Virus record (IMG/VR): IMGVR_UViG_3300043399_000297 | Span: 62,001 to 126,000 of that record | Strand: one strand, 5' to 3' | DNA length: 64,000 bases | In this document: positions 16,591 through 31,470 of the stretch, in pieces | Position numbering within the stretch: position 1 is the stretch's first letter | Layout of the letters: every line of letters starts with the position of its first letter | The notes under the pieces: generated by a model | What the model saw: only the letters and a program-made list of their open reading frames with translations | What the model was told of the DNA's origin: nothing | Databases searched by the model: none | Program-made: the position numbers and the translations under genes

Positions 16591-18855
16591 ATGGAATTTA
16601 TTTTGGATTTTAATTTAACTTCTTTGGCAAAAAAAGATTTAAAGCCAAATGAAAGGCCAACTGAAGATATAGCTGACGTTAGGCATAGAGCAATGATGGA
16701 TGCCATTGCTCCCTATGCTAAATCTACAGTGCAAAAGAACTTAACTCCGGTTTACGTAGATTACAAAACAAGAGAAACTACAATGGTTCTTGTATTGTGT
16801 CCCGAGTGGAGCCCTTATATGCCGCCGTTTAGTCTTGCTAGGCTAAGTGGTATTGCTAAAGCTGCGGGCTATGAAACACATATAATGGATTTGAATGTGA
16901 AGGCATATAATGCTTTCAAGAATGATTGGCAACCAAATAATAAATTGCCTTTTCGGTTGTGGTACCCCAGTTCTAGTTGGCATTGGCTAGGACAATCATA
17001 CATGAATGATATTCATCCTGTTTTGGAACCTATATTGAACGAGGCAGTAGATAAAATTATTGAAATGAATCCAACTGTAGTTGGCTTTAGTGTTTACTAT
17101 ATCAGTGAAGAACCCACTAAGTGGATGTGTCAGGAAATTAAAAGACGCAACCCAAACATTCTAATTGCAGTAGGCGGACCTAACGTTCATAACAGTTGGT
17201 TTCAAATTCATCCTTATTATGATTATGTTATAGTAGGAGAAGGGGAGCAAAATCTTCTTAAGATGCTTGATGAGATTGAAGAGGGATGGGTACCTACTAA
17301 AACTAAAGTGTTAACACAGCCTGAGAACGAGCGTATTAATATAAATGGTCTTCCTATGCCTGATTATGAAAGCATAGATTTTAGTGAGTATGAAATTCCA
17401 AATGGCATTAATAGCGAGATTAGCCGCGGGTGTACGGCCAAGTGTTCGTTCTGCGAAGAAACTCATTTTTGGAAGTATAGACAAAGACAAGCAGTTGATT
17501 TAATTACTGAGATAGAATGGCTTTATTATAATAAAGGAACAGATATTATTTGGTTCATTGATAGTCTTATCAATGGTAACATTAATGAGTTACGCGCATT
17601 TGCATTGGCACTAAAACAAAAGAATCTGCCTATTAGGTTTACTGGATATGCAAGACACGACGGTAGAATGGATTTAAATTACTTACAAGACCTCAAGGAC
17701 GGCGGCTGCATTATGTTTAATTTTGGGTGTGAATCAGCATCACAGAAAGTTCTTGACGATATGCACAAGGGTGTAACCATTCAAGAAATGGAACAGAACT
17801 TTATCGATTGTAAGAAGGTAGGCATCTATTGTGCTACTAATTGGATTGTAGGATTCCCTACAGAAGATTTTCAAGATTATAGCGATACTATGACTTTTAT
17901 GTGGCGTATGCGTAATAATAACATAAACAATATGGGATTAGGAGTAGGATATGGTTTAGGACCTGAAACGATTGTAGGTCAGAATCCACAAAGATTCAAT
18001 GTATCATATCACAAATATCAAAATCATTGGATTACTGCTGACTTAAAAATGGGAGGCCCGCATGTTATGACTCGCGTTAAAACTATACATATGTGGCTTG
18101 ATTTTTTCAAAGGTTGTACTGAAGTTCCGATCGGATATCCTGCTCGTTTCTTTCTTGAAAAAGAGCATTATAAAATTATATTAAATGATCCTACTGTGCA
18201 AAAAGAAATGTATTACGAAAAGTTCAATTATAATATCATTCCTCCTGTATCAGACGATAATCCTTTTGCTAATCAATTGATAAATGAAATGTGGCCCTTC
18301 TTTAGAAATCTTTGGAGAGCAAGAGGTGGGTATGAAGCAGAAGTATTGTTCAACCCTGAAATCGATTTGAAAGAATTTGGAACTCAGTATGGTCCGGGGC
18401 AGTATTGGGCGACATATAAGTTCAAGATTACTGACGAAGGACAGTGGGAAGCAGACTTTGATATCAAGTTTGAGCAAGTTGATAATCCGCTAGATGACCG
18501 CCCTTACCCGCCGGAGGGACGCAAGGGTCCTTTCTATGCTCAGGATTATAGTAGAGCGCAGACAAACACTGTTAAGCGGGCCCGAAAGTTAGCTAAGCCA
18601 ACTTGGAGTAATGAAACGGGCAGAGACGATAGTGAGTTTTGGGAACTTTTAGAAGAAGAAAGAAAGTTAAATGAAACAATTGACTTCTCGTTTCATACTC
18701 AATATACTGCAACTGGTGACTGGAGTGATATCGACAGATATAAAGTTGAGGTATCTAACCAAAAGAGAGCTTTATTACCCGAAAAGGATGTTGATATCGG
18801 TAGTGATGTAGTATCATCTATATCACTAGATAGTATTATAAAAAAGAAGAAATAA
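16591..18855 (+). CDS. Cobalamin-binding radical SAM protein with long C-terminal extension
   Basis: PPFSLARLSG, GFSVY, GGPN, GEGE, SRGCTAKCSFCEE, FGCESAS, IVGFPTE. Confidence 0.88.
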   Translation: MEFILDFNLTSLAKKDLKPNERPTEDIADVRHRAMMDAIAPYAKSTVQKNLTPVYVDYKTRETTMVLVLCPEWSPYMPPFSLARLSGIAKAAGYETHIMDLNVKAYNAFKNDWQPNNKLPFRLWYPSSSWHWLGQSYMNDIHPVLEPILNEAVDKIIEMNPTVVGFSVYYISEEPTKWMCQEIKRRNPNILIAVGGPNVHNSWFQIHPYYDYVIVGEGEQNLLKMLDEIEEGWVPTKTKVLTQPENERININGLPMPDYESIDFSEYEIPNGINSEISRGCTAKCSFCEETHFWKYRQRQAVDLITEIEWLYYNKGTDIIWFIDSLINGNINELRAFALALKQKNLPIRFTGYARHDGRMDLNYLQDLKDGGCIMFNFGCESASQKVLDDMHKGVTIQEMEQNFIDCKKVGIYCATNWIVGFPTEDFQDYSDTMTFMWRMRNNNINNMGLGVGYGLGPETIVGQNPQRFNVSYHKYQNHWITADLKMGGPHVMTRVKTIHMWLDFFKGCTEVPIGYPARFFLEKEHYKIILNDPTVQKEMYYEKFNYNIIPPVSDDNPFANQLINEMWPFFRNLWRARGGYEAEVLFNPEIDLKEFGTQYGPGQYWATYKFKITDEGQWEADFDIKFEQVDNPLDDRPYPPEGRKGPFYAQDYSRAQTNTVKRARKLAKPTWSNETGRDDSEFWELLEEERKLNETIDFSFHTQYTATGDWSDIDRYKVEVSNQKRALLPEKDVDIGSDVVSSISLDSIIKKKK

Positions 18856-19439
18856 TGGAAAAGGTTGCAGAACTTGAAAAGTTAATTGCAGACTATTATA
18901 ATGCACCATATGCCGTAGCAGTTGATTGTTGTACTCACGCAATTGAATTGTGTTTGCGCACACGAAAGACATTACTTGTCACCTGCCCCAAGAACACATA
19001 TGTTAGTGTTCCTATGACATTCAAGAAATTAGGACTTAACTGGAAGTTTCAAGAAGAACGATGGAATGACTATTATCTGATTGGTGGAACGAACATTATT
19101 GATGCTGCCGTATATTGGAAAGAAAACGGATATCTTCCTGGATCTATGATGTGTCTCAGTTTTCAATTTAAGAAACATCTCAATTTGGGCAGAGGAGGAA
19201 TGATCTTACTCGACAACTACGATCAATATCTTACCTTAAAGAAGATGAGGTATGATGGCAGAATTGATGGCATACCTTGGGCTGAACAAGATATCGACAC
19301 AGTGGGTTATCATTATTATATGACGCCTGAAACTGCACAGCTTGGTATATCTCGTTTTTCTATTGCAAAGACTACTGAACCTAAGCAGTGGTCTTATCTA
19401 GATTATCCTGACCTATCTAAGATGAAGGTGTTCTCCTGA
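18855..19439 (+). CDS. DegT/DnrJ/EryC1/StrS PLP aminotransferase (short form)
   Basis: AVAVDCCTHAIEL, IIDAA, SFQFKKHL (PLP Lys), GRGGM, GYHY. Confidence 0.85.
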   Translation: MEKVAELEKLIADYYNAPYAVAVDCCTHAIELCLRTRKTLLVTCPKNTYVSVPMTFKKLGLNWKFQEERWNDYYLIGGTNIIDAAVYWKENGYLPGSMMCLSFQFKKHLNLGRGGMILLDNYDQYLTLKKMRYDGRIDGIPWAEQDIDTVGYHYYMTPETAQLGISRFSIAKTTEPKQWSYLDYPDLSKMKVFS

Positions 19440-19449
19440 GATACCTTCG

Positions 19450-20190
19450 ATGAAGTTATTCATTTTGTCTTTTCCGCATCACGCAAAATTATCAAAATTA
19501 TGTGCAAAGTTTGCAATCAATAATGTTTTAGGAGTAACCGAAATAGTATATCTATGGGATGATTTTCATCTAACTGGACAACAACATCCATATGGTACTG
19601 GCGCAAATGTTATAAATTATAGCTATTTTAAACATACTAATTTAGCCACTAGTGGTTGGATTAGACAGCAATTTGTAAAGCTTCAGCTACATTTACTAAC
19701 AACTGATGAAGATTTTTATATTCTTGACGGTGATACTTTAGTTCGTAATCCAATAGACCTAAGGCCAAATAGAATGCTAACTTTTACAGAGCATCACTAT
19801 CCCTATTTTGAATTCATTGACAAAGCACTTAGATTACAAAAAAAGAATGACTTTAGTTTTATTTCTCCGCTAGTTAGATTCGAAAGAGAAGTATTAGTCG
19901 AATTAGAAAATTATTCAAATGCTATTAACGGGTGTGATCTTTTTGAGACATTTTTGCAATGCAACTATGATCCCAGTACATTGCCGATATCGGAATGCGA
20001 AATATACGGGACCTTTGCGACACAAATTTTAGGTAAAACTTTTGAATTCATATCCTCACCCTTTACAGAGTGTTCATTGGCTAAACCAAATGGAAATGAT
20101 TTTGAAGAATTATATTTCACGACTAACTGTGATTTAGTGTTGTCTGGCTCAGAATATTTTCTGAGTGATTATTTTTGGGATAATTGTTAG
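19450..20190 (+). CDS. Putative GT-A glycosyltransferase (DUF6492-like)
   Basis: GWIRQQFVKL, ILDGDT (DxD), SECEIYG. Confidence 0.5.
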   Translation: MKLFILSFPHHAKLSKLCAKFAINNVLGVTEIVYLWDDFHLTGQQHPYGTGANVINYSYFKHTNLATSGWIRQQFVKLQLHLLTTDEDFYILDGDTLVRNPIDLRPNRMLTFTEHHYPYFEFIDKALRLQKKNDFSFISPLVRFEREVLVELENYSNAINGCDLFETFLQCNYDPSTLPISECEIYGTFATQILGKTFEFISSPFTECSLAKPNGNDFEELYFTTNCDLVLSGSEYFLSDYFWDNC

Positions 20191-21165
20191 ATGCTTAGTA
20201 AAAATGAATGGGATCCCTTGAAAACTGTAATCGTGGGTATTGCAGATGATGCAAAAATTCCAAGAACTAATATAGGACTTAGAACAGTAAATTATGCCGA
20301 CTTAACTTTTAGTGAATACCTAAGGGTTAAGCACGGAAGATATCCAGATCAAGTTATAGAGGAAGCCAATGAAGACCTATCTATTCTATGTGAATTTTTA
20401 CGAGAACAAGATATTCAAGTTCTGCGCCCTCAAAGCAACGATCCTGACTATTATAACTATTGCCCTAGAGATACTGTATTAGTACACGATGATATTATAC
20501 TTGCAACTCCTACTGCACTATCCTGCAGGAGAGAGGAGTGGCGAGCAAATAAAGCACACTTTGATATAGACAGATTGATAGTAGCTCCTAAACCCGAACA
20601 CAGTGATACTTATAACTCAGGATGTGTAGGAAACCCTGATATATTAGCACTACGAGAATATGAACCAGTCTTTGATGCTGCAAACATTCTTAGATGTAAC
20701 GATGATTTGTTTTATCTCGTGAGCAATACCGGTAATAAGAAGGGTGCAGAATATTTACAAGAGATTGTAGGACCTAGCAAGCGAGTACACACTATTGAAA
20801 ACGTGTATAGCTATATTCATCTTGATAGCACTATAGCATTCTTGCGTGAAGGATTGGTGTTATTGAACCCTTCGCGAATTAAAAGCATAGATCAACTTCC
20901 TGAAGTATTACATAATTGGGATGTAATCTGGGCTCCTGAGCCATTCGACATTGGCCACTATCCGGGATACTGTAATGCAAGTAAATGGGTGAGCGTGAAC
21001 CTACTATCAGTTAATCCTAAGCTAGTTGTTCTAGAGGAACATCAACACGCCCTGTGTAAAGAATTAGAAAAATATAACATTGATTCGGCTATGCTTCCAA
21101 TGCGACACGCTCGTACTCTGGGAGGATGTTTTCACTGCGTTACCTTAGATTTAGAACGCAGATAA
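20191..21165 (+). CDS. Amidinotransferase (StrB1 inosamine-phosphate / glycine amidinotransferase family)
   Basis: NEWDPLKTVIVG, CPRD, FDAAN, HLDST, GGCFHCVTLD (catalytic Cys). Confidence 0.9.
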   Translation: MLSKNEWDPLKTVIVGIADDAKIPRTNIGLRTVNYADLTFSEYLRVKHGRYPDQVIEEANEDLSILCEFLREQDIQVLRPQSNDPDYYNYCPRDTVLVHDDIILATPTALSCRREEWRANKAHFDIDRLIVAPKPEHSDTYNSGCVGNPDILALREYEPVFDAANILRCNDDLFYLVSNTGNKKGAEYLQEIVGPSKRVHTIENVYSYIHLDSTIAFLREGLVLLNPSRIKSIDQLPEVLHNWDVIWAPEPFDIGHYPGYCNASKWVSVNLLSVNPKLVVLEEHQHALCKELEKYNIDSAMLPMRHARTLGGCFHCVTLDLERR

Positions 21166-21186
21166 ATTTAATACTTAAATACTCTT

Positions 21187-22908
21187 ATGAAACAAGCAAA
21201 AGTTGAAGTTGGTCATATGGGTAGATATTGGAACGATGATTTCAAAACTTTGCCATATGTGAAACAGGGTGTAACTAAAGAAGAAGTCGAAAACTGGGAG
21301 CGGTTGGGATATTCTGAAAATTTTGTAAAAAGCTACACTGGATCAATGTATGATCACAGTAATGTGATGCCTGAATGGATAGATAGATTTGAAAATGCGT
21401 TTGGTTTATATAAGCAATCCTACACGTTTTACTGTATGCAAACTTGTGAAATTATGCCGACGCACAGTGATCACTTCTCTACCTATTGCAAAATAAATAA
21501 CACCACGCCTGATAAAGTCTATAGGGCAATACTGATGTTAGAAGATTGGAAACCCGGCCACTATTTTGAACTCGACGGTGTTGGATATGTTAACTGGAAG
21601 GCAGGAGACTGGTTCAAATGGAGAGGAGATGTTCCGCATGCCGCAAGCAACATAGGAATAGAGCCTAGGTATACGCTACAAGTTACTGGTCTTGATTTTA
21701 GAGTCGGTCAGTTAAACAGACTGTTTTCATTTAATATACCGGACGTTGAGGAGGAGGATAATCATCCCTTACTAAAAGATATATCTAATAAGATACAAGA
21801 GTCTCATTATATGGTGTATTTAAATAACGGATATATAACTGAGCTTGATTCTATTAACCACTCTCAGGATGTTCAAGAATTATTGAATAAAGAAGGATTG
21901 CATATCTATATGTATGAACCGCTGTGTAGTTATAGAATGCAGCAGGATAATCATACTCAAGGGTTTTATTCAGAATTTGATGATATATCACCTTATGATT
22001 TGCAAGCTGAAGAACTTGATAGCATATATGTTTATGTTAGAAGAAATAATTTGAACAATGTTACTGTTCATACAGGTGATTATAATGCAGGAGATTGGTA
22101 TAAAGATTACACTGATCGAATGAATTTGATATGTGACGATTTGTTTTTGAAAACACAAAAAACAATAGTTAACATACGGGAAACACCTAGTAATGAATTC
22201 ATTTATAATTTTATATGTTTAAACTGGCGCTTTACTAAACATAGACAATTAGTTGCTACTTATCTTGCTGGGCAGTCAGGACATTTGAGTTGGCATTTCA
22301 AATCAAAGTTTGATGTACTAGGAAAAGATTTGTTTTTTGATTTAGCCGAGTGGAAAGAGAAATATCCCACAATATATCAGAGGTTAGAACAAGGATGTGA
22401 CTATATTAGTCAGCATTCACCGTTATGCCTAGACAAAAGATCAAATCGTGCAATAGAAGTGTTAGATCCTAAATATGTAGAAATGTGGCCAGATTCAAAT
22501 GAATATGAACCAGGTGTCACGCCTTCACTGTACAATCAGGTATCCAATAACTTGTCCGATTATTATTTCCACGTGTTTTTGGATGTAGTAAACGAAACTC
22601 GGTTTGCACAACCGACTGCTAACATCAGTGAGAAGACTTTCCAGCCTATGCAATATTTTAAACCCTTTGTGCTAGTTGCCCCACCTAAGTCCCTTGAATA
22701 CGTCAAATCACTCGGTTTTAAAACCTTCAGTGATTTTTGGGATGAGAGCTATGATAACGAGTTTGATCACGGGGAGAGATTAGTTAAGATTTTTCAATTA
22801 TTAGATAAGTTGTTTGCAATGTCTAATCAAGAGCAACGTGACCTTTATAATAAGATGTTGCCTGTATTGCAACATAATTTTGACAGGTATAAGGATTTTG
22901 TGTTATGA
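21187..22908 (+). CDS. Cupin/2OG-Fe(II) oxygenase-like domain fused to a glycosyltransferase-like domain
   Basis: N-terminal PTHSD..DWKPGH..PHAASN..RYTLQVTG; C-terminal LNWRFTKHR..NET..SEKTFQP..KPF..LGFKTF..DESYD. Confidence 0.65.
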   Translation: MKQAKVEVGHMGRYWNDDFKTLPYVKQGVTKEEVENWERLGYSENFVKSYTGSMYDHSNVMPEWIDRFENAFGLYKQSYTFYCMQTCEIMPTHSDHFSTYCKINNTTPDKVYRAILMLEDWKPGHYFELDGVGYVNWKAGDWFKWRGDVPHAASNIGIEPRYTLQVTGLDFRVGQLNRLFSFNIPDVEEEDNHPLLKDISNKIQESHYMVYLNNGYITELDSINHSQDVQELLNKEGLHIYMYEPLCSYRMQQDNHTQGFYSEFDDISPYDLQAEELDSIYVYVRRNNLNNVTVHTGDYNAGDWYKDYTDRMNLICDDLFLKTQKTIVNIRETPSNEFIYNFICLNWRFTKHRQLVATYLAGQSGHLSWHFKSKFDVLGKDLFFDLAEWKEKYPTIYQRLEQGCDYISQHSPLCLDKRSNRAIEVLDPKYVEMWPDSNEYEPGVTPSLYNQVSNNLSDYYFHVFLDVVNETRFAQPTANISEKTFQPMQYFKPFVLVAPPKSLEYVKSLGFKTFSDFWDESYDNEFDHGERLVKIFQLLDKLFAMSNQEQRDLYNKMLPVLQHNFDRYKDFVL

Positions 22909-23651
22909 AAAAGATAGGTTTGGTAGCTGGATGCAGCCATTCGGCAGGCTCAGAAATGGATGGAACAGAGGATAGTTATTATAATCGTCAAAATGCATTT
23001 GGCTCATTATTGTGCAAAAGCCTAGGGTACGAACCAATAAACATTGCATTGGGCGGCGCGGCAAATAGCGGCATCGCAAGAAGTATTTTGTTGTGGTTTG
23101 ATGAGTTTTATAAAAAAGATGAGATGGATGTGTTTGTTGTTATCGGGTGGACTGAAAGCTCAAGACTTGAAGTTCCGGCAGAATCTAGGCTTTGTTATTA
23201 CAACGAAGCTAATAGCAGTGCAGATTGGTATGACGCTTCTGCTAACTATTTTCATAGAATAAACTTTGGGTGGATGGGAGCAACCGAAGAAGAACAGATT
23301 ATGATTCCTATATATCAAAACTTTATGGCAAATAATCCTTCAATTCTAGAAAATTGGTCAGCAACTAGCGTTTTGCAAATTCAATACTTTTTAAAATCGT
23401 TGAATGTTAAGTATGTAATGAGCAATACTATGCATATGTTTCAACCAGACAATGATTTTACTAAGTTCTTGATTAGTCAAATAGATAAAACAAGATATTT
23501 TAATTTACTTACTGATCAAAATATGTCGTTCTATTGGAAGTATGCAAATCTAGGATATGAAAATAAGAAAGCTACATATTGGCATCACGATGAAGAACCT
23601 CACCGGTTGTATGCAGAAGAACTTCTTAAGTTTCTAGAAGACGTAGAATGA
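22905..23651 (+). CDS. SGNH/GDSL-like protein
   Basis: VAGCSHSAG, NIALGGAANSGI, IGWT...R, WHHDEEPH. Confidence 0.55.
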   Translation: MKKIGLVAGCSHSAGSEMDGTEDSYYNRQNAFGSLLCKSLGYEPINIALGGAANSGIARSILLWFDEFYKKDEMDVFVVIGWTESSRLEVPAESRLCYYNEANSSADWYDASANYFHRINFGWMGATEEEQIMIPIYQNFMANNPSILENWSATSVLQIQYFLKSLNVKYVMSNTMHMFQPDNDFTKFLISQIDKTRYFNLLTDQNMSFYWKYANLGYENKKATYWHHDEEPHRLYAEELLKFLEDVE

Positions 23652-24478
23652 TTTTGTACTGTAATGGAGACAGTTTTGTAGCGGGAGTCGAATTGGGGGA
23701 TGATATTTTACCTGAATATCCCGGCACACAAGACTTTGATGCTCCCACTAGTGTAATAAATCTGGCAAAAGAGTGGATATTAAAAACACAGAATCACACA
23801 CATCCGTGGGCGGCTATGCGACAAGAGCTATTCACACAAATTTTTGATATCGAACGCAGTAGAGCTTTCCCTAACAAGATTAGTAAATTACTTAATCTTC
23901 CTGTAATCAATAACGCATTAGGAGGTTCTAGTATGGATAGAATAGCAAGAACTACTATTGATAGCTTAATTGAATTAAAGAGAGAAAATGAGGATATTAT
24001 TGCTATAATAGGAATAACTGAGGCTAGTAGATCAGAACTTGCTAACTTCAATGAGTGTTACAATAACGAGTATTCAACTAGATGGGTAGATATGTCATTG
24101 GGTTATGTTAATGAAGGGGTAAAGCCACTAGAAGCAGTCAGAAACTACAAACTGCGTTATGAAACGGATTATCACTGTCAAATAAATTTCTACAAGAATG
24201 TTATTCTTTTACAAGATTTCTGTAAAGTAAATCATATTCCCTTGTTTTGGGTAAACCCGGGTTTTACTAATCTATCTAACTCGCACCCTGATACTGATTT
24301 GCTAAATATGAAGAATTATGCAAATCTTACTTGTATTGTAGATATGGTAGAGATTGCAAGAAAAATTAATGTTAACGTTAGGTGTCCATCGGGGCATCAT
24401 TCGGAAGTAGTTCACGATGAAGTGGCAAAAATAATTGCCTCGATATTACAGGAGAGCAGCTATGTTCAAATTCATTAA
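23648..24478 (+). CDS. SGNH/GDSL-like protein
   Basis: YCNGDSFVAG, NNALGGSSMDRI, SGHHSEVVH. Confidence 0.6.
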   Translation: MILYCNGDSFVAGVELGDDILPEYPGTQDFDAPTSVINLAKEWILKTQNHTHPWAAMRQELFTQIFDIERSRAFPNKISKLLNLPVINNALGGSSMDRIARTTIDSLIELKRENEDIIAIIGITEASRSELANFNECYNNEYSTRWVDMSLGYVNEGVKPLEAVRNYKLRYETDYHCQINFYKNVILLQDFCKVNHIPLFWVNPGFTNLSNSHPDTDLLNMKNYANLTCIVDMVEIARKINVNVRCPSGHHSEVVHDEVAKIIASILQESSYVQIH

Positions 24479-24566
24479 AAAAATTGTCAACAAGATTAAA
24501 CGAGAGATTACATACCGCAAGCGTGTCAAAGAACTACGCAAAAGAGATCCGTTCATTTACAAATGA
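24462..24566 (+). CDS. 34-aa basic peptide MFKFIKKIVNKIKREITYRKRVKELRKRDPFIYK (not in the ORF track)
   Basis: GGAG RBS upstream; the stop overlaps the carbamoyltransferase start (ATGA); fills the intergenic gap exactly. Confidence 0.75.
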   Translation: MFKFIKKIVNKIKREITYRKRVKELRKRDPFIYK

Positions 24567-26047
24567 GTTATCTAGGCATTAGCTGCGGCTTTCACGATGC
24601 TGCTGTCAGTGTAGTTGACAGTGTTGGCAATATCACCTTCGCCGGACATAGCGAACGTTATAGTAAGAAAAAACACGATGAAAACTTATCTGTTGATCTA
24701 GTCAAAGATGCACTAACGCATTCATATGGCTCTATGGAACTACACTATTATGAGAGACCATACATTAAGGCTATCAGGCAATGGCAAGCTGGACAAGATA
24801 TCGGGCCATTGAACGTTAAAGATATAATTGGCTCAGATGTATTAGATACTCTAAAAATGTATGATAGTAAGATTCATACACACAATCATCATCTTTGTCA
24901 CGCCGCAGCCGGCTTTCAAACAAGCCCATTCAATGATGCTACTGTAGTTGTCATTGATGCGATAGGGGAATTAGATACTATTAGTATTTGGCACGCCACT
25001 TATAATAAGAAAGGTAGAGCGAAGTATAAGAAGCTTTGGGGAAAGAAATATCCTAATTCAATAGGACTAATGTATTCAGCTATGACACAGAGAGTAGGTC
25101 TTAGACCATTAGACGAAGAATACATATTGATGGGTATGGCAGCATATGGCAAACCTAAATATTTTGATTTATTAAATGATACCTTTTTGTCTAATCCTGC
25201 GTATATTGATTTTAGGCAGAACTTGCATACAGGAGTAGATCAAAGTTTCTTGTCCGGTGCAGATGATATGGATATTGCTAGTTCTGCGCAAGCGTTGGCA
25301 GAAGTATTGATTCGAATTGTATTGTTAAAGGCGATGCATCTGGGAAGAAGTAGTAACCTAGTATATAGCGGAGGAGTAGCACTCAACTGTGCAGCCAATA
25401 GATATCTAGGAAGCTATTTCAAAAATATGTGGATTATGCCTAACCCAGGTGATGCAGGCAATAGTCTTGGTGCAGCAGCATTAGGGTACGGTAAGAAATT
25501 AAATTGGACTAATGCATTCTTGGGTTATGAAATCAAAGGCGATTATCCGGTTGACAATCTCATAAAAGAGTTGCATAGTAATAAGATCGTAGGAGTAGCT
25601 AGTGGTAGAGCAGAGTTCGGTCCAAGAGCATTGGGTAATCGTAGTCTGTTAGCAGACCCACGCGGCCCTAATATTAAGGATAAGGTTAATGAGATTAAGC
25701 GAAGACAAAAGTTCAGACCATTTGCGCCGATCGTTTTGGAGGAGTTGGTTACTGATTACTTTGATATGCCTACTGGTTGGACTGACTCTAGGTATATGCA
25801 AGTCGTCGCTATTTGTAGGCATCCTGGTTTATTTCCTGCTATCGTTCACGCTGACGGGACTAGTCGTGTTCAGACTGTTCCTAAAGATGAATCAGGAATC
25901 AGAAAGCTTTTAGAAGTTTGGTACGAACAGACCGGCTGCCCTATGCTTCTTAATACATCACTGAATATTCGCGGTGAACCCATGGTCAACGATAGAAATG
26001 ATGCTGACCGCTTTGAAAAACTCTATGGAGTAAAAGTATATTCATAA
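24563..26047 (+). CDS. O-carbamoyltransferase (NodU/CmcH/TobZ family)
   Basis: HDAA, ERYS, HHLCHA, MGMAAYG, GGVALN, PGDAG, EFGPRALGNRS, FRPFAP, NTSLN. Confidence 0.93.
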   Translation: MSYLGISCGFHDAAVSVVDSVGNITFAGHSERYSKKKHDENLSVDLVKDALTHSYGSMELHYYERPYIKAIRQWQAGQDIGPLNVKDIIGSDVLDTLKMYDSKIHTHNHHLCHAAAGFQTSPFNDATVVVIDAIGELDTISIWHATYNKKGRAKYKKLWGKKYPNSIGLMYSAMTQRVGLRPLDEEYILMGMAAYGKPKYFDLLNDTFLSNPAYIDFRQNLHTGVDQSFLSGADDMDIASSAQALAEVLIRIVLLKAMHLGRSSNLVYSGGVALNCAANRYLGSYFKNMWIMPNPGDAGNSLGAAALGYGKKLNWTNAFLGYEIKGDYPVDNLIKELHSNKIVGVASGRAEFGPRALGNRSLLADPRGPNIKDKVNEIKRRQKFRPFAPIVLEELVTDYFDMPTGWTDSRYMQVVAICRHPGLFPAIVHADGTSRVQTVPKDESGIRKLLEVWYEQTGCPMLLNTSLNIRGEPMVNDRNDADRFEKLYGVKVYS

Positions 26048-26056
26048 GTAGTTATT

Positions 26057-29000
26057 ATGCTACGTGATGTATTTTACTATGGACAGAAACCAAACGTTCA
26101 TCCGAGAGAACAGTTTGCTAAAGATTTAGAAGATGCTAGGAATAAAGCGACTACTCGTGACTTTTGGATAATCAACGAATTCTGCGATTATCGTAATTTT
26201 AATTGGGATTTCGATTTTGAGTTTCTCCCAGATGAAGATGTATGGGCAGAAGATCATAACAATGTATGGCCTAGCCAACATCAAAAAGATTCAGGAACCT
26301 GGTTATGCCCCAAACAGCATAGTGACTTAATTATATATCGGTGTGATGTTGATCCTATCTGGCGCAAGAACGAAAAGCAAAGTGTTAATTGGGTTGAATT
26401 AGATTTAATTGACCATACTAAGTTTGACTTTAGTTGGCATCCTGATCCTACTGATCCTCCTTATATCTATAAGTGGGGATGCAAATATTATCCTGCTCAA
26501 ATCAAGCACGTATTAGAATATCGTGTTCCGGGCTCAACTCAAGAAAAATTTATGGATATTTCTGCGGAACTTTTGCCTGACTGGGATAAATGGGTAATAC
26601 CTGACAGTATAAATAAATCCGGGTTTGATTTTTCTTGGAGACCCAGTCCTCTTGACCCGCCGCTTATATATGAATTTGGAACGCAATGGCAAAAGGATGG
26701 TGGACCGATTTATGTTGCTAGTGGAGCAACTAAAAGGAAGTATATCAATGATCAAAAAGCTACGAGGATTGCTTCAAACGAAAATTGGACGATTCCTGAC
26801 AATATTGATATTGCTGGATTTGATTTATCATGGCATCCAGATAATATTAGTCCTCCTTATATCTATGTATTTGCTACTCAGTGGGCACTCAGTGGCGGAC
26901 CTGTTTACACAGTTCCTGGCGCAACTGAAATCAAATATGTAGACGCTCAGGTAGCTACTGCACTCCCCGATAAAACAAATTGGATATACAACGAAGAAGA
27001 AATTGACGTTTCTAGTTTTGACTTCAGTTGGCATCCCTTTTCAGGGGACGACCCTTTCATCTATCAGTTTGGTACTCAATGGCAAAAGACTGGAGGTCCG
27101 AAATATATTACTCCGGGCGCGGATGAATCAAGCCCGATCAAGTATGTTGATACTCGTATTATCAAAGCTACTCACCTGCCTGACAAAAACAAGTTCATTG
27201 TATTGGGAAACAATGCTGTTCAGGAGTTTGATTATAGTTGGCATCCAGATGATACAGAAGATCCATATATCTATGTGTTTGGCAATCAATGGCATACAGC
27301 AGAAGTTATGCCAACCATTGAATACAGGATGACTGGCGCAACCCAATACAAGTATATAAATGATACTATTGCTATTCTTGGTCCTAATATGACACATTGG
27401 TTTTACGACTCAAACGAGATAGATGTTTCTGATTTTGATTTTAGTTGGTGTCCTAATCCCGGAGAACCTGAATTAATTTATGAGTTTGCTACTCAGTGGC
27501 AAAAGACTGGTGGTCCTAGATATATTGTGCCGGGTGCTACTGACGTAAAGTATTTAGACTTTCAAAAAGCAAGAGCATTGCCTTCTGAAAAAAATTGGAC
27601 AGTTCCTAGCAATATTGATGCAACGTTGTTTGACTTCAGTTGGCATCCTGATGCGACTAGCCCTCCTTATATCTATGTATTTGCTACTCAGTGGGCACTC
27701 AGTGGCGGACCTATATATACTGTACCGAACGCAACCGAATACAAATATGTCGATGAACAGATAGCTACTGCATTACCTGATATGACCAATTGGGTATATG
27801 ACGAAACAAAGATTGATGTTGAAAGTTTTGACTTCAGTTGGCATCCATATGTTGAAGATCAGCCATATATCTATCAGTTCGGTACACAATGGTGGCCAAC
27901 TGGTGGACCAAAATATATTGCACCGGGGGCAACAAGCGCAAGCCCAGTAAAATACATTGATACACGTATCATTAAAGCTAATACAATACCGGGTCTTGAA
28001 AATTGGGAAATTCCGGACGAGGTAGATAAAAGTAAGTTTGATTTTACTTGGATCCCTCATCCAGAAGACCCTCCCTATATATATGTGTTCGGCAATCAGT
28101 GGTTTAGTGCAGAAAAAATGCCCACTGTAAGATATATTGTTGAAGGTGCAACTGAAATTAAGTATGTTCGCGATATCATTGCTACAATAAAACCAAACAA
28201 AGACAATTGGACAATAGCTAATAATATAGTAGTGAAAGAGTTTGATTTTAGTTGGATACCAGATCCTCATTCTCCTCCTTATATCTATGTGTTCGGTAAT
28301 CAATGGTATTCAGCAGAAGAAATGTCAACTGTAGAATATCACACTCTTGGTGCTACTGAAAGAAAATATATTAATGATATTAGGGTTGTGTTAGACAAAA
28401 ACTTTACGAATTGGGAAATACCAAAAGGAATCGATGTTTCGCGATTTGATTTTAGTTGGATCCCTCATCCTAAAGCACCTCCATATATCTACCAGTTCGG
28501 CACCTTAAAGGATCCGTTGGATGGACCTAGATATATTACTCCAGGCAACAATGGAGAAATAGTTCGTGTACCAAGAATAGAACTTGATGAAATTGAATTT
28601 ATGCCTATCAATAGATATTATATTGAAACTACGTTGGATGACTTGATTATTAAACATCCAGATGAAATGTTCTGGGCGCTGAATAAAGAAATAGATTATT
28701 CTACATTTAACTTTGACTGGACCCCTTCATTGGACCAAGCAGATTATATTCAGGTATTCGGTCAAAGCTCAAGTATAAAAACTCAAACTTATTTGATCAA
28801 TTCTACATTGTGGACTAAAGGGTTGCGAGAGTTTAATTATGTAGAAGAACAAGAGAAAAAGACTGTTTCTGATTTGGATATCTTTTTTGTGGACAAAGGA
28901 AACTCAGAAGCTAATGAAAGATTCCATATACTAAAAAACAAGTTCGGCTCAAAGATTCAAAAGACACGATATCTCAACAGTTGGGTAGACACAATTAATC

Positions 29001-30604
29001 GCTGTATTAATCGTGCTACAAGTAATCTAATTTGGATTCTTAACAGCGAATTAGATTATTCTAACTTTGACTTTACTTATTACCCTAACCCTTGGCAGAT
29101 GAAGATGGTTCACGTATTTGGAACACAACATAGTCATTGGGGAACAACTTTTATGGTCAATCGCGAAACGTTTCCCGAAGATACAAAGTATATTAAAATC
29201 ATTGAACATTTGTCAAATCTAAACTTTGTCAAGGACATTAGAGCCAAAGCAACTGAATGTGTATATGATATTGTCATTATAGACCACAATAATATAGAAA
29301 GCTTATCAGTTACAGAAACGATGAAAAGAGTTTGGGCTCCTAATAGGAATGTTACTACTATAAAATATGAGGATAGTTATCTAAACACAATTCGTAACTA
29401 TGTAAAGAAGTTACCTGACAAAAAAGAACATTATCTTTGGATTTGCTCAAGCGTATGCGACTATACTAACTTTGACTTTAGTTATATATGTGATCCCTTT
29501 GCTAAAGATAATCTACACGTATTTCCCAGCAATAATCAAAAGTTTGGGGACACGTTCTTGTTGGATGTAAACAAGACTAAAGAAATCATAGATGATCTAG
29601 AAAAACTTGAAGATTATAATAAGGTGAGCTATAACAGTGCTACGAAGGCGAATAGATTGTTGCCACCAATCATCGTCACAGAAAATGATACGCATACCAA
29701 TTCATTAGAAACTATTACAGGATTTCCTTATGCAAGACTGATTACTAAGGACAACTTGAATGTTGAAGTTCCTGAGATTGAACCTATGAATCTATGGTCA
29801 CCTGAAACTAAGAACATTCAGGTACTAAGCACCGGTGCAACTCATATTGTAGCTCCTATAGAAATTAAAGATTATGTCAAGAAAGAACTATACGAATATC
29901 CATATATTAAACGCGCTCCAAAGTTAGCATTGTCTAATCCTATTGATATCGTGTTCTTGAGCAACGGTGAAATTGGTGCAGAAGAAAACTATGAACATCT
30001 ATTGAATATCACTAAGAACTTGAAGAACCGTGTAGTGAGAGTAGATGGGGTGAACGGTCGTGTTGCAGCATATCATAAAGCAGCAGAAGCTAGCGAAACG
30101 CCGTGGTTCTTCACGGTGTTTGCTAAGTTGAAGGTTAGTCCCAAATTTGATTTTAACTGGCAACCTGACAGAATGCAAATCCCCAAGCACTACATCTTCC
30201 ACGCAAAGAATCCTGTCAATGGGTTGACATATGGTCACCAGGCAATGATTGCATACAACAAAAAGCTTACTCTTGCTAATGAGGGATATGGACTAGACTT
30301 TACATTAGATGACGAACACGAGGTTGTGCCACTTATCTCTGGTACCGCACATTATAATACAGATGAATTTTCTACTTGGAGAACAGCATTTAGAGAGGTA
30401 ATCAAGCTTAAAGCAGACATTAGTGATATAGCCAAAGATAGACTTGATGTATGGTTGAATAAAGCAGAAGGTGACTTTGCTCAATATAGCATTAAGGGTG
30501 CATTGGATGCTGATGAATATTATGATGAAGTCAATGGCGAGTTTGACAAACTCAAGCTAAGCTATGAATGGGATTGGCTACGCAAAAAGTTTGGGGAAAT
30601 GTGA
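26057..30604 (+). CDS. 1515-aa protein with tandem FDFSWxP/PYIY repeats and degenerate GT-A-like domains
   Basis: 11 internal repeats of about 65 aa; C-terminal domain homologous to ORF 1703 (DIVFLS, RVDGVNG, WRTAFREVIK). Confidence 0.75.
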   Translation: MLRDVFYYGQKPNVHPREQFAKDLEDARNKATTRDFWIINEFCDYRNFNWDFDFEFLPDEDVWAEDHNNVWPSQHQKDSGTWLCPKQHSDLIIYRCDVDPIWRKNEKQSVNWVELDLIDHTKFDFSWHPDPTDPPYIYKWGCKYYPAQIKHVLEYRVPGSTQEKFMDISAELLPDWDKWVIPDSINKSGFDFSWRPSPLDPPLIYEFGTQWQKDGGPIYVASGATKRKYINDQKATRIASNENWTIPDNIDIAGFDLSWHPDNISPPYIYVFATQWALSGGPVYTVPGATEIKYVDAQVATALPDKTNWIYNEEEIDVSSFDFSWHPFSGDDPFIYQFGTQWQKTGGPKYITPGADESSPIKYVDTRIIKATHLPDKNKFIVLGNNAVQEFDYSWHPDDTEDPYIYVFGNQWHTAEVMPTIEYRMTGATQYKYINDTIAILGPNMTHWFYDSNEIDVSDFDFSWCPNPGEPELIYEFATQWQKTGGPRYIVPGATDVKYLDFQKARALPSEKNWTVPSNIDATLFDFSWHPDATSPPYIYVFATQWALSGGPIYTVPNATEYKYVDEQIATALPDMTNWVYDETKIDVESFDFSWHPYVEDQPYIYQFGTQWWPTGGPKYIAPGATSASPVKYIDTRIIKANTIPGLENWEIPDEVDKSKFDFTWIPHPEDPPYIYVFGNQWFSAEKMPTVRYIVEGATEIKYVRDIIATIKPNKDNWTIANNIVVKEFDFSWIPDPHSPPYIYVFGNQWYSAEEMSTVEYHTLGATERKYINDIRVVLDKNFTNWEIPKGIDVSRFDFSWIPHPKAPPYIYQFGTLKDPLDGPRYITPGNNGEIVRVPRIELDEIEFMPINRYYIETTLDDLIIKHPDEMFWALNKEIDYSTFNFDWTPSLDQADYIQVFGQSSSIKTQTYLINSTLWTKGLREFNYVEEQEKKTVSDLDIFFVDKGNSEANERFHILKNKFGSKIQKTRYLNSWVDTINRCINRATSNLIWILNSELDYSNFDFTYYPNPWQMKMVHVFGTQHSHWGTTFMVNRETFPEDTKYIKIIEHLSNLNFVKDIRAKATECVYDIVIIDHNNIESLSVTETMKRVWAPNRNVTTIKYEDSYLNTIRNYVKKLPDKKEHYLWICSSVCDYTNFDFSYICDPFAKDNLHVFPSNNQKFGDTFLLDVNKTKEIIDDLEKLEDYNKVSYNSATKANRLLPPIIVTENDTHTNSLETITGFPYARLITKDNLNVEVPEIEPMNLWSPETKNIQVLSTGATHIVAPIEIKDYVKKELYEYPYIKRAPKLALSNPIDIVFLSNGEIGAEENYEHLLNITKNLKNRVVRVDGVNGRVAAYHKAAEASETPWFFTVFAKLKVSPKFDFNWQPDRMQIPKHYIFHAKNPVNGLTYGHQAMIAYNKKLTLANEGYGLDFTLDDEHEVVPLISGTAHYNTDEFSTWRTAFREVIKLKADISDIAKDRLDVWLNKAEGDFAQYSIKGALDADEYYDEVNGEFDKLKLSYEWDWLRKKFGEM
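26385..28560 (+). repeat. Coding tandem repeat array (11 units of about 200 bp) with an 810-bp higher-order duplication
   Basis: Unit is NW...ID...FDFSWxP...PYIYxFGxQW...Y..PGAT..KY; 51 bp are identical at 26852-26902 and 27662-27712. Confidence 0.85.
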
Positions 30605-30613
30605 TTATTTCAC

Positions 30614-30642
30614 TTGACAATATGGTATAAGATAAGTATATT
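30614..30642 (+). promoter_or_regulatory. sigma70-type promoter
   Basis: TTGACA-17-TATATT. Confidence 0.7.
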
Positions 30643-30677
30643 AGAACATAGTTCAATTTATCTTGAAGGATATTAAA

Positions 30678-31055
30678 ATGAAGAAGATTGTGTCAGCTAT
30701 TGCCCTCGCTACAGTGCTTTTTTCTAGCACTGCTGCTCTTGCAGACGGTCGCGATTATCGCTGGGGAGTAGACAGCAATCGTCATAGCCCATATTACGGT
30801 AGAAATTATGATCGTGGATATGATCGCAATTATGATAGGCATCGTGATGGTGGTGTAAGCACAGGAGGTGCTGTTGCAATTGGGCTTGGGGCATTGATCG
30901 TTGGTGCATTGATTGCTAATGGTAATAGGAATAATCGCAACACCTATCAGGATCAGCAGCAGTATTATCAGCCACAGCAGGTTTGTGAAGATATCATCAA
31001 GTATGACTATTACAATAACCCCTATGTTGCTGGTAGAAATTGCTGGTATAGATAA
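30678..31055 (+). CDS. Secreted/membrane protein with signal peptide and glycine-zipper helix
   Basis: MKKIVSAIALATVLFSSTAALA signal, RxYD repeats, GGAVAIGLGALIVGALIA. Confidence 0.65.
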   Translation: MKKIVSAIALATVLFSSTAALADGRDYRWGVDSNRHSPYYGRNYDRGYDRNYDRHRDGGVSTGGAVAIGLGALIVGALIANGNRNNRNTYQDQQQYYQPQQVCEDIIKYDYYNNPYVAGRNCWYR

Positions 31056-31058
31056 AGA

Positions 31059-31087
31059 TTGACATTTATATCACATTGTGATATATA
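31059..31087 (+). promoter_or_regulatory. sigma70 promoter of the tmRNA with a palindromic spacer
   Basis: TTGACA-17-TATATA, containing TATATCACA-T-TGTGATATA. Confidence 0.75.
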
Positions 31088-31093
31088 AAGTTA

Positions 31094-31446
31094 TCAGTTG
31101 TTGATACAATCTGATGTTTGTGCAGGACCCGGGGGCGGTACCCGGCAGGTCCACCATCAACCTTGTCACTGTAGCTAGTGAAAGCTGACTAGTGAAAAAG
31201 GATAAACCTGTCGAAGGAGGATAAGCTCTCCGGGGGACGGGGGAATGGCCCGCTCGACATGCGGGAGGACAAGGTTGTTGATGGGCCTGAAACAGGATCG
31301 ACTGCAAGGCGGAGGTGAGAGTAGACTGATTGGTTGGTCGCATATAGACCAAAATAAACAACTGCAAATGATAATGACTTTGCATTTGAATTGGCTCTAG
31401 CAGCCTGATTCATTGGGTATGGCTCCACCCCGAAACAGAACGGGCC
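31094..31446 (+). ncRNA. ssrA: Circularly permuted two-piece tmRNA (alphaproteobacterial type)
   Basis: Acceptor piece ends GGACCCGGG-GGCGGTA-CCCGGCAGGTCCACCA (31156). Coding piece starts GGGCCTG (31283), giving a 7-bp acceptor stem with a G3.U70 pair. Tag ORF 31364-31408 reads ANDNDFAFELALAA*. Outer ends are approximate. Confidence 0.93.
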
Positions 31447-31470
31447 TCTTTCCATACAGATAAATACAGT

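What the first reader, a model, noticed from the sequence alone, without database searches (positions are those of the whole stretch)
24462..24566. Hidden 34-aa basic peptide ending PFIYK coupled to the carbamoyltransferase
Seen: an RBS-bearing ORF below the track cutoff, strongly K/R-rich and amphipathic, with its stop overlapping the carbamoyltransferase ATG. Recalled, not searched: bacterial SxtI-like carbamoyltransferases are often flanked by small SxtK/DUF5989 proteins ending in a PFIY motif. Inference: a dedicated small accessory subunit or membrane tether that docks through PFIY; less likely a peptide substrate.
Basis: partly seen in the sequence, partly recalled or inferred. Interest (0 to 1): 0.6.

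Follow-up and report, generated by a model that had tools for sequence, protein, structure and literature searches.

The report
Conserved mini-protein partner of a carbamoyltransferase
The 34-codon reading frame is a real, strongly conserved and almost never annotated gene for a one-helix basic mini-protein ending in DPFIY(K); the same tail accompanies one whole branch of carbamoyltransferases in phages and bacteria, free or fused to partner enzymes, so it is most likely a docking tail for that enzyme.

Summary
Window 24462-24566 (+) is a 34-aa ORF with AGGAG 7 nt upstream and a TGA that overlaps the carbamoyltransferase (CT) ATG.

It is a real gene.
- The same peptide (basic helix plus [RK]xDP[FY][IL]Y, with or without K or P) lies on the CT strand in 79 of 80 related IMG/VR phage loci and about 44 of 60 bacterial or MAG loci. 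The opposite strand gives 0 hits.
- dN/dS is about 0.14 with saturated synonymous sites.
- A profile search finds 464 clusters (50% identity). None has a Pfam, NCBIfam or PHROG name.

The tail is modular. In Streptomyces and relatives it is the disordered C-terminus of the neighbouring DUF6071 (SGNH-fold) enzyme. In two phage loci it ends a SnoaL-like protein.

DUF5989/SxtK ends in APFIYTLF, and 29 of 30 sampled genes sit next to a CT. That CT clade groups beside the tail-linked clade. But the peptide is not a DUF5989 member: no HMM hit, no hydrophobic segment, no SxtJ in this genome.

Best reading: a portable C-terminal docking tail, or accessory subunit, for this CT clade. Binding is inferred, not shown. 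The main rival is a HypE-like carrier or substrate tail with the invariant Tyr as acceptor.

The parts
24450..24454 (+). Shine-Dalgarno AGGAG, 7 nt before the ATG
   Evidence: GGAG/AAGGA-type sites stand before most homologs (upstream 20-mers).
24462..24566 (+). 34-aa mini-protein gene: helix over residues 2-28, then the tail DPFIYK
   Evidence: alignment A2: P30 and Y33 invariant; D29, F31, I32 at least 90%; dN/dS about 0.14; 464 clusters; helix plus tail.
24546..24563 (+). Codons for the conserved tail D29-P30-F31-I32-Y33-K34
   Evidence: the invariant P uses 4 codons and I uses 3, so selection acts on the protein.
24563..26047 (+). Carbamoyltransferase (494 aa, NodU/CmcH/TobZ type); its ATG overlaps the peptide stop
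   Evidence: Carbam_trans_N and Carbam_trans_C; phrog_1601; NovN 9s2t, GdmN, TobZ; HHxxH kept; member of the tail-linked clade.
23648..24478 (+). SGNH-like protein, weak DUF6071 match (copy b), directly upstream
   Evidence: E 5.7e-4; cluster 2; G-D-S, N and H..H blocks align with DUF6071.
22905..23651 (+). SGNH-like protein, weak DUF6071 match (copy a)
   Evidence: (E 6.6e-4).
26057..30604 (+). 1515-aa protein with 11 tandem repeats of about 67 aa, each carrying PP[YF]IY. Context only; its link to the tail is unproven.
   Evidence: I and Y invariant in the repeats; downstream of the CT in 63/80 viral loci; only a 7-column match to the peptide, probability 15%.

Best explanation
Window 24462-24566 encodes a genuine mini-protein. 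It is a single basic alpha-helix that ends, after a D-P helix stop, in an exposed C-terminal tip with the core [FY][IL]Y. The tail is a portable short linear motif specific to one clade of NodU/TobZ-type carbamoyltransferases. It occurs free (30-50 aa, usually translationally coupled to the CT) or as the disordered C-terminus of partner enzymes, namely the SGNH-fold DUF6071 protein and a SnoaL-like protein. Inferred mechanism: the tip docks on the CT, so the free peptide acts as a small accessory subunit or adaptor, and the fused form tethers the partner enzyme to the CT in a glycan or small-molecule tailoring module. Shown: the gene is real, under purifying selection, linked to the CT clade, linked to DUF6071, and modular through fusions. 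Inferred: physical binding to the CT, and what the binding achieves.
For: Conservation: 79/80 IMG/VR loci and about 44/60 genome loci carry the tail on the CT strand, with none on the other strand. It is also present, unannotated, in the cultured Ralstonia phage RsoM2USA.

Coupling: in 64 of 79 viral loci the stop lies from -4 to +7 nt of the CT start. In the other 15, a SGNH-like gene or more lies between.

Selection: dN/dS is about 0.14 and dS about 1.5 over the last 20 codons.

Fusions: the tail is the C-terminus of DUF6071 proteins (E 1e-30 to 1e-37) next to the CT in Streptomyces and other actinobacteria. Those loci have no free peptide. Sister loci have [peptide][CT][DUF6071 without tail]. 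The tail also ends SnoaL-like proteins in L041 and L043.

Structure: the fused tail (residues 263-290) has pLDDT below 50 behind a confident SGNH domain, so it does not dock in cis. The free peptide is a helix plus a tail.

Phylogeny: tail-linked CTs form one clade (SH-aLRT 99). More distant phage CTs lack the tail. The neighbouring clade is the DUF5989/SxtK-linked one, whose small protein also ends in PFIY.
Against: No direct evidence of binding exists: the complex prediction was not specific. A free peptide that only docks has no obvious second function. Amphipathicity, and hence membrane binding, is not a family trait. In DUF5989 the PFIY follows a hydrophobic segment that comes after an RKK cluster. 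If that protein spans the membrane N-in, its PFIY would lie on the far side from a cytoplasmic CT, so the shared motif may not share a role (inference sequences). The invariant Tyr fits a nucleophile as well as it fits a binding residue.
Confidence: 0.45

Rival explanations
1. Carrier or substrate tail (like HypE with HypF, or RiPP-like). The CT transfers a carbamoyl group (or an adenylate) onto the invariant Tyr of the flexible tail. The tail then delivers the group to the SGNH-like DUF6071 enzyme, or is itself the product.
For: Y33 is invariant next to the C-terminus. The tail is a disordered, swinging-arm-like extension on the SGNH enzyme. It is a small ORF beside tailoring enzymes, and radical SAM genes are frequent in the phage loci. 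From recalled knowledge: HypF, of the same YrdC/Kae1 superfamily, carbamoylates the C-terminal Cys of HypE. TIGR00143 hypF gives a weak hit to a clade member.
Against: D, P, the aromatic residue and I/L are as conserved as Y, which is typical of a binding motif. No protease, transporter or RRE-type gene is conserved nearby. The DUF5989/SxtK-linked CT clade includes SxtI, whose proposed substrate is a small molecule (PMC2679770). O-carbamoyl-tyrosine has no precedent that I know of.
Confidence: 0.22
2. Divergent DUF5989/SxtK homolog acting as a membrane tether. The peptide is an SxtK that lost its hydrophobic segment and holds the CT at the membrane through its basic amphipathic helix.
For: It has the same position 5' of a CT and the same PFIY near the C-terminus. 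The two CT clades group together. The window copy is amphipathic.
Against: There is no HMM hit. hhalign aligns 5 columns only. There is no hydrophobic segment and no SxtJ. Amphipathicity is not conserved in the family. The fused forms sit on soluble enzymes.
Confidence: 0.12
3. Cis-acting leader peptide. The nascent chain ...DPFIYK stalls or paces the ribosome to control translation of the overlapping CT gene.
For: The stop overlaps the CT start, the C-terminal residues are the most conserved, and the family is selected at the amino-acid level.
Against: The same tail ends full-size enzymes located downstream of the CT. A 35-60 nt spacer and a separate RBS follow before the next gene. In 15 viral loci the peptide is not adjacent to the CT. 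In L095 it follows the CT.
Confidence: 0.05

Closest known systems
SxtK / DUF5989 (PF19451), with SxtJ, beside SxtI-type carbamoyltransferases
   Same: It is a small protein encoded directly beside a CT, mostly immediately 5' of it. It has an invariant P-F-I-Y near the C-terminus and a basic patch N-terminal to it. Its CT clade groups beside the tail-linked clade. Its function is also unknown; it is only proposed to act 'in conjunction' with SxtI (PMC2679770).
   Different: DUF5989 has a 17-residue hydrophobic segment and ends in TLF. It comes with SxtJ. It shares no detectable similarity with the peptide beyond 5 residues. The window peptide is a fully polar helix, has no SxtJ partner, and is instead linked to DUF6071.
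C-terminal tail of HypE as substrate of HypF (recalled knowledge)
   Same: A YrdC/Kae1-type carbamoyltransferase acts with a partner protein through that partner's flexible C-terminal tail.
   Different: HypE's acceptor is a terminal Cys on a large ATP-dependent enzyme. Here the conserved residue is Tyr, and the carrier can be a 34-aa peptide. No modification has been shown.
Basic C-terminal tail of Bud32/PRPK reaching into Kae1 in KEOPS (recalled knowledge)
   Same: A basic C-terminal tail of a partner protein contacts a Kae1-fold domain as a regulator and is not itself modified.
   Different: The sequence, the partner and the system (tRNA t6A) are different. The analogy was not tested here.
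MbtH-like proteins of NRPS adenylation domains (recalled knowledge)
   Same: A small accessory protein is encoded beside a tailoring or biosynthetic enzyme, is sometimes fused to a neighbour, and is needed for the partner's solubility or activity.
   Different: MbtH-like proteins are folded domains of about 70 aa, not a helix plus a linear motif.

Membership tests
DUF5989 / SxtK (PF19451) | Match to the family HMM above its cut-off (27 bits) | tested here: not met
   No Pfam hit at E up to 1. No hit in the phage genome at E up to 10. hhalign aligns 5 columns, probability 22%.
DUF5989 / SxtK (PF19451) | Central hydrophobic segment (LLPILI..LLGGLIVL) after an RxRKK patch | tested here: not met
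   The window peptide has no run of hydrophobic residues and is modelled as one polar helix.
DUF5989 / SxtK (PF19451) | Invariant P-F-I-Y close to the C-terminus | tested here: met
   APFIYTLF versus DPFIYK.
DUF5989 / SxtK (PF19451) | Encoded beside a carbamoyltransferase and an SxtJ gene | tested here: inconclusive
   CT adjacency is met. SxtJ is present in the two DUF5989 loci tested (L145, L147), but no SxtJ is found in this phage record (the record is about 71% complete).
Unnamed 'basic helix + DP[FY][IL]Y' tail family (defined here) | C-terminal [RK]xDP[FY][IL]Y plus 0-2 residues, after a K/R-rich helix, on the strand of a CT of the tail-linked clade | tested here: met
   The profile finds 464 clusters.
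Unnamed 'basic helix + DP[FY][IL]Y' tail family (defined here) | A SGNH-like (DUF6071-type) gene in the same operon | tested here: met
   Window 22905-23651 and 23648-24478. Found in 25/80 viral and 24/60 genome loci by tblastn, which is a lower bound.
RiPP precursor peptide | Leader/core architecture with conserved processing protease, transporter or RRE-bearing enzyme nearby; modified core | tested here: inconclusive
   No such genes are conserved among the neighbours. Modification cannot be tested with these tools.
Regulatory leader / arrest peptide | Always a separate short ORF immediately 5' of the regulated gene | tested here: not met
   The tail ends 290-aa DUF6071 enzymes downstream of the CT and SnoaL-like proteins. 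In 15 viral loci it is not adjacent to the CT.

The most novel reading that the evidence does not exclude
The P-aromatic-I-Y tail is a carbamoyl carrier arm. The CT loads the invariant Tyr, as HypF loads HypE, and the tail swings the group into the SGNH-like DUF6071 enzyme, which passes it to a glycan or protein acceptor. The same logic would explain SxtK. The PP[YF]IY in each of the 11 repeats of the giant downstream protein would then be acceptor or recognition sites.
Probability: 0.15. Interest if true: 0.85.

Novelty: new variant of a known kind. Interest (0 to 1): 0.6.

Why it matters
Small proteins beside carbamoyltransferases (SxtJ and SxtK) have been listed as 'function unknown' since the saxitoxin clusters were described. 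This finding adds a second, much larger and almost wholly unannotated family with the same PFIY signature. It also adds natural fusions that name its partners: the CT and a SGNH-fold DUF6071 enzyme. That turns a vague association into a testable three-part module. The module is present in cultivable systems, including Ralstonia phage RsoM2USA, Streptomyces hoynatensis, Edaphobacter modestus, Micromonospora and Nocardia. The finding also shows that annotation pipelines miss a gene present in hundreds of phage and bacterial lineages.

Tried and rejected
- Complex prediction of CT plus peptide with family alignments. Scores were 0.63, 0.35 and 0.68, but one unrelated 34-mer control scored 0.54. 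The verdict was 'no answer', so it counts neither for nor against binding.
- Family libraries. Pfam, NCBIfam and PHROGs have nothing for the peptide.
- Word-based protein search: only 7 near-identical 34-42 aa proteins, all unnamed.
- ESM Atlas: only unnamed 33-37 aa clusters.
- Literature: no paper contains DUF5989, DUF6071 or DPFIY. A search for 'carbamoyltransferase' plus 'jumbo phage' gave nothing relevant.
- Megablast of the region against GenBank phages: no match.
- Expression: only DNA runs from a freshwater metagenome hold the locus and no RNA run does.
- Promoter and terminator scan of 19000-31500: no excess over shuffles.
- Exact-sequence look-up of the free peptides from isolate genomes: not on record as called proteins. 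Only the DUF6071-tail fusion is, named 'DUF6071 family protein'.
- Giant repeat protein: the Atlas search gave no usable hit, and Pfam and PHROGs gave none.
- 'Amphipathic membrane helix' as a family trait: rejected.

Full report
**1. The observation**

The + strand carries ATG at 24462, 34 sense codons and TGA at 24564-24566. AGGAG lies at 24450-24454, 7 nt before the start. The carbamoyltransferase (CT) ATG is at 24563-24565, so stop and start overlap as ATGA. The ORF start overlaps the last 17 nt of the upstream gene (23648-24478). The product (window:24462-24563:+) has 14 K/R in 34 residues and a net charge of +11. The downstream gene is a 494-aa NodU/CmcH/TobZ-type CT. It matches Carbam_trans_N and Carbam_trans_C and phrog_1601. 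Its closest solved relatives are NovN, GdmN and TobZ, and the HHxxH metal motif is kept. The window is part of a 244-kb IMG/VR phage record of 38.8% G+C, estimated about 71% complete, from a freshwater metagenome.

**2. It is a real gene**

A scan of IMG/VR with the CT gave 80 loci with CTs 64-74% identical.
- 79 of them encode, on the CT strand, a 31-49 aa peptide ending in ...YRKR[IL]KELRKRDPFIY(K).
- In 64 loci the peptide stop lies between -4 and +7 nt of the CT start, in several different registers. In 15 loci, one SGNH-like gene or more lies between.
- A strict pattern finds the tail on the CT strand in 79/80 viral and 37/60 genome loci. It finds none on the opposite strand and none in 30 DUF5989 loci.
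- Over the last 20 codons of 57 distinct phage sequences, dN/dS is about 0.13-0.15 and dS about 1.5. The invariant Pro uses all four codons and the invariant Ile uses three. Selection is therefore on the protein, not on an RNA or DNA element.
- In the 92-sequence alignment A2, P30 and Y33 are invariant, and D29, F31 and I32 are at least 90% conserved. The N-terminal half varies.
- AlphaFold2 on A2 gives one helix (residues 2-28, pLDDT above 90) and a non-helical DPFIYK end.
- A profile search of 1.84 billion representatives finds 464 clusters at E up to 1e-3. Nearly all are 30-75 aa, with the match at the C-terminus.
- Pfam, NCBIfam and PHROGs have no model for it. The literature library has no mention of the motif.
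- The gene is unannotated in the GenBank record of Ralstonia phage RsoM2USA, where it fills the gap between genes 201 and 200.
- The free peptides of isolate genomes are not on record as called proteins.

**3. Range**

A scan of one genome per prokaryote species with a CT profile gave 60 loci with CTs 37-62% identical. About 44 of them carry the tail. These include cultured Streptomyces, Micromonospora, Nocardia, Saccharothrix, Amycolatopsis, Agromyces and Edaphobacter modestus DSM 18101, and MAGs assigned to Collimonas, Reyranella and several other phyla.

The tail varies: DPFLYK in actinobacteria, DPYIYK, DRFIY(P), KEFIY, and INFIYT. The irreducible core is therefore [FY][IL]Y at the extreme C-terminus, after a basic stretch.

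Most loci without a tail fall into one of three groups. Some are truncated. Some hold only partial CTs. Six (L109, L117, L120, L134, L138, L139) belong, with phage C48C1, to a tail-less subclade nested inside the tail-linked clade.

More distant phage CTs have no such ORF. These are S-SSM7, HTVC008M, S-CAM8, RAS14 and C48C1.

**4. Modularity and partners**

- In Streptomyces and relatives (L110, L112, L113, L119, L137, L105, L118, L141, L130), the tail is the C-terminus of a DUF6071 protein (PF19547, E 1e-30 to 1e-37) encoded after the CT. These loci have no free peptide.
- Sister actinobacterial loci have [peptide][CT][DUF6071 without tail].
- In the window and many phages the order is [SGNH-like][peptide][CT] or [peptide][SGNH-like][CT]. 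Edaphobacter has [GDSL-like][peptide][CT].
- In L041 and L043 a SnoaL-like protein carries the tail in addition to a free peptide.
- The AlphaFold2 model of the L110 fusion has a confident SGNH/GDSL-esterase fold (pLDDT about 95). Its nearest solved folds are EstL5, TesA and Axe2. Its last 28 residues are disordered (pLDDT below 50), so the tail does not dock in cis.
- NCBI names this fusion only 'DUF6071 family protein'.
- Bacterial neighbourhoods contain GT2 and GT4 glycosyltransferases, DegT aminotransferases and a Mur ligase-type protein. Phage neighbourhoods contain radical SAM/B12 enzymes and a giant repeat protein. This points to a glycan or small-molecule tailoring module.

**5. The DUF5989/SxtK parallel**

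- PF19451 is DUF5989. It is found in 54 of 201 sampled Pseudomonadota genomes.
- Its consensus has a basic N-terminus, a 17-residue hydrophobic segment, and the end ...GSAVAPFIYTLF.
- 29 of 30 sampled genes have a CT homolog beside them, and 22 of those CTs start 20-30 nt after the DUF5989 stop. An SxtJ gene lies directly upstream in the two loci tested (L145, L147).
- The window peptide is not a member by sequence. There is no HMM hit. hhalign aligns only DPFIY with APFIY (probability 22%, P 9e-4).
- It has no hydrophobic segment, and no SxtJ is found in this phage record.
- In a tree of 78 CTs, the tail-linked CTs form one clade (52 rows, SH-aLRT 99) and the DUF5989-linked CTs another (22 rows, 99). 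Both lie on the same side of a branch (support 94) that separates them from cyanophage and pelagiphage CTs. That tree comes from a quick search, has long outgroup branches, and is rooted at the midpoint only.
- This fits an old association between this CT lineage and a small PFIY protein, but it does not prove homology of the two small proteins.

**6. Mechanism**

The best-supported reading is a portable C-terminal docking tail for this CT clade. Free, it would be an accessory subunit or adaptor. Fused, it would tether DUF6071 or SnoaL-like enzymes to the CT. The supporting points are:
- strict clade-specific co-occurrence;
- translational coupling;
- fusions to two unrelated enzyme folds;
- disorder of the fused tail;
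- a conservation pattern (D-P-aromatic-I/L-Y) typical of a binding motif.

Binding itself is inferred. The single complex prediction was not specific, so it is no evidence either way.

The main rival is a HypE-like carrier or substrate tail with the invariant Tyr as acceptor. The disordered arm on the SGNH enzyme and the radical SAM context keep this rival alive. A leader-peptide role is unlikely, because the same tail ends full-size enzymes downstream of the CT, and a spacer and a separate RBS follow those genes. A membrane-tether role is not supported as a family trait.

One caveat applies to the SxtK analogy. If DUF5989 spans the membrane with its RKK patch inside, its PFIY would face away from a cytoplasmic CT. 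This is an inference from the sequences.

**7. Verdict**

The peptide belongs to a widespread, unnamed and rarely annotated mini-protein/tail family. It parallels SxtK but is distinct from it, and it is tied to a CT plus an SGNH-like enzyme. I rate it a new variant of a known kind, with interest 0.6.

Noticed in passing
window 26057-30604 (+): A 1515-aa protein directly after the CT has 11 tandem repeats of about 67 aa (NW.IP..ID...FDFSWHP....PP[YF]IY.FG.QW...GP.Y..PGAT..KY.D), and I-Y is invariant in them. Some repeats read DDPFIYQFG or EDPYIYVFG, like the peptide tail. Homologs follow the CT in 63/80 viral loci. Pfam, PHROGs and the Atlas give nothing. hhalign to the peptide aligns only 7 columns (probability 15%), so a link is unproven.
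   Followed up: partly
L002:2026-2136 (+) = MG752970.1 complement(125891..126001): Ralstonia phage RsoM2USA, a cultured jumbo phage, has an unannotated 36-aa member (...IRKQDPFIYK) in the gap between annotated genes 201 and 200, one gene upstream of its CT (gene 199).
   Followed up: yes
L041:1131-1565, L043:2250-2669: SnoaL-like proteins of 140-150 aa end in ...FRKRDPFIYP or ...LRNRDPFIYK. Each of these phage loci also has a free peptide (...KEPYIYK or ...KDPYIYK), so one CT can have two tail-bearing partners.
   Followed up: partly
window about 18000-18852 and L030:418-2634, L078:4562-5824: Radical SAM genes, one type with a B12-binding domain, recur upstream or downstream of the CT module in 22-26 viral loci. 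The window ORF ending at 18852 clusters with the B12/radical SAM type.
   Followed up: partly
window 20191-21165 (+): A 324-aa ORF ends in ...GGCFHCVTLDLERR, which recalls the C-terminal Cys motif of amidinotransferase/arginine-deiminase-fold enzymes (recalled, not tested). Pfam gives no hit. PHROGs gives phrog_25854, of unknown function.
   Followed up: no
P0008, P0011, P0031 (database proteins): P0008 is two peptide units fused in tandem (75 aa). Several called proteins run on past ...DPFIYK with a Q (P0008, P0011, P0031). This could reflect stop-codon recoding in some phages or the gene caller's code.
   Followed up: no
L109, L117, L120, L134, L138, L139, L004: A tail-less CT subclade is nested inside the tail-linked clade, which looks like secondary loss. 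L109 and L134 keep a SGNH-like gene right after the CT, and L134's ends in ...SYVYD.
   Followed up: partly
L136:3-1952 (-): The Reyranella locus has a second, 650-aa CT divergently oriented just upstream of the [SGNH-like][peptide][CT] module. The same genome also has a separate DUF5989-CT pair (L145), so both small-protein systems coexist in one organism.
   Followed up: no
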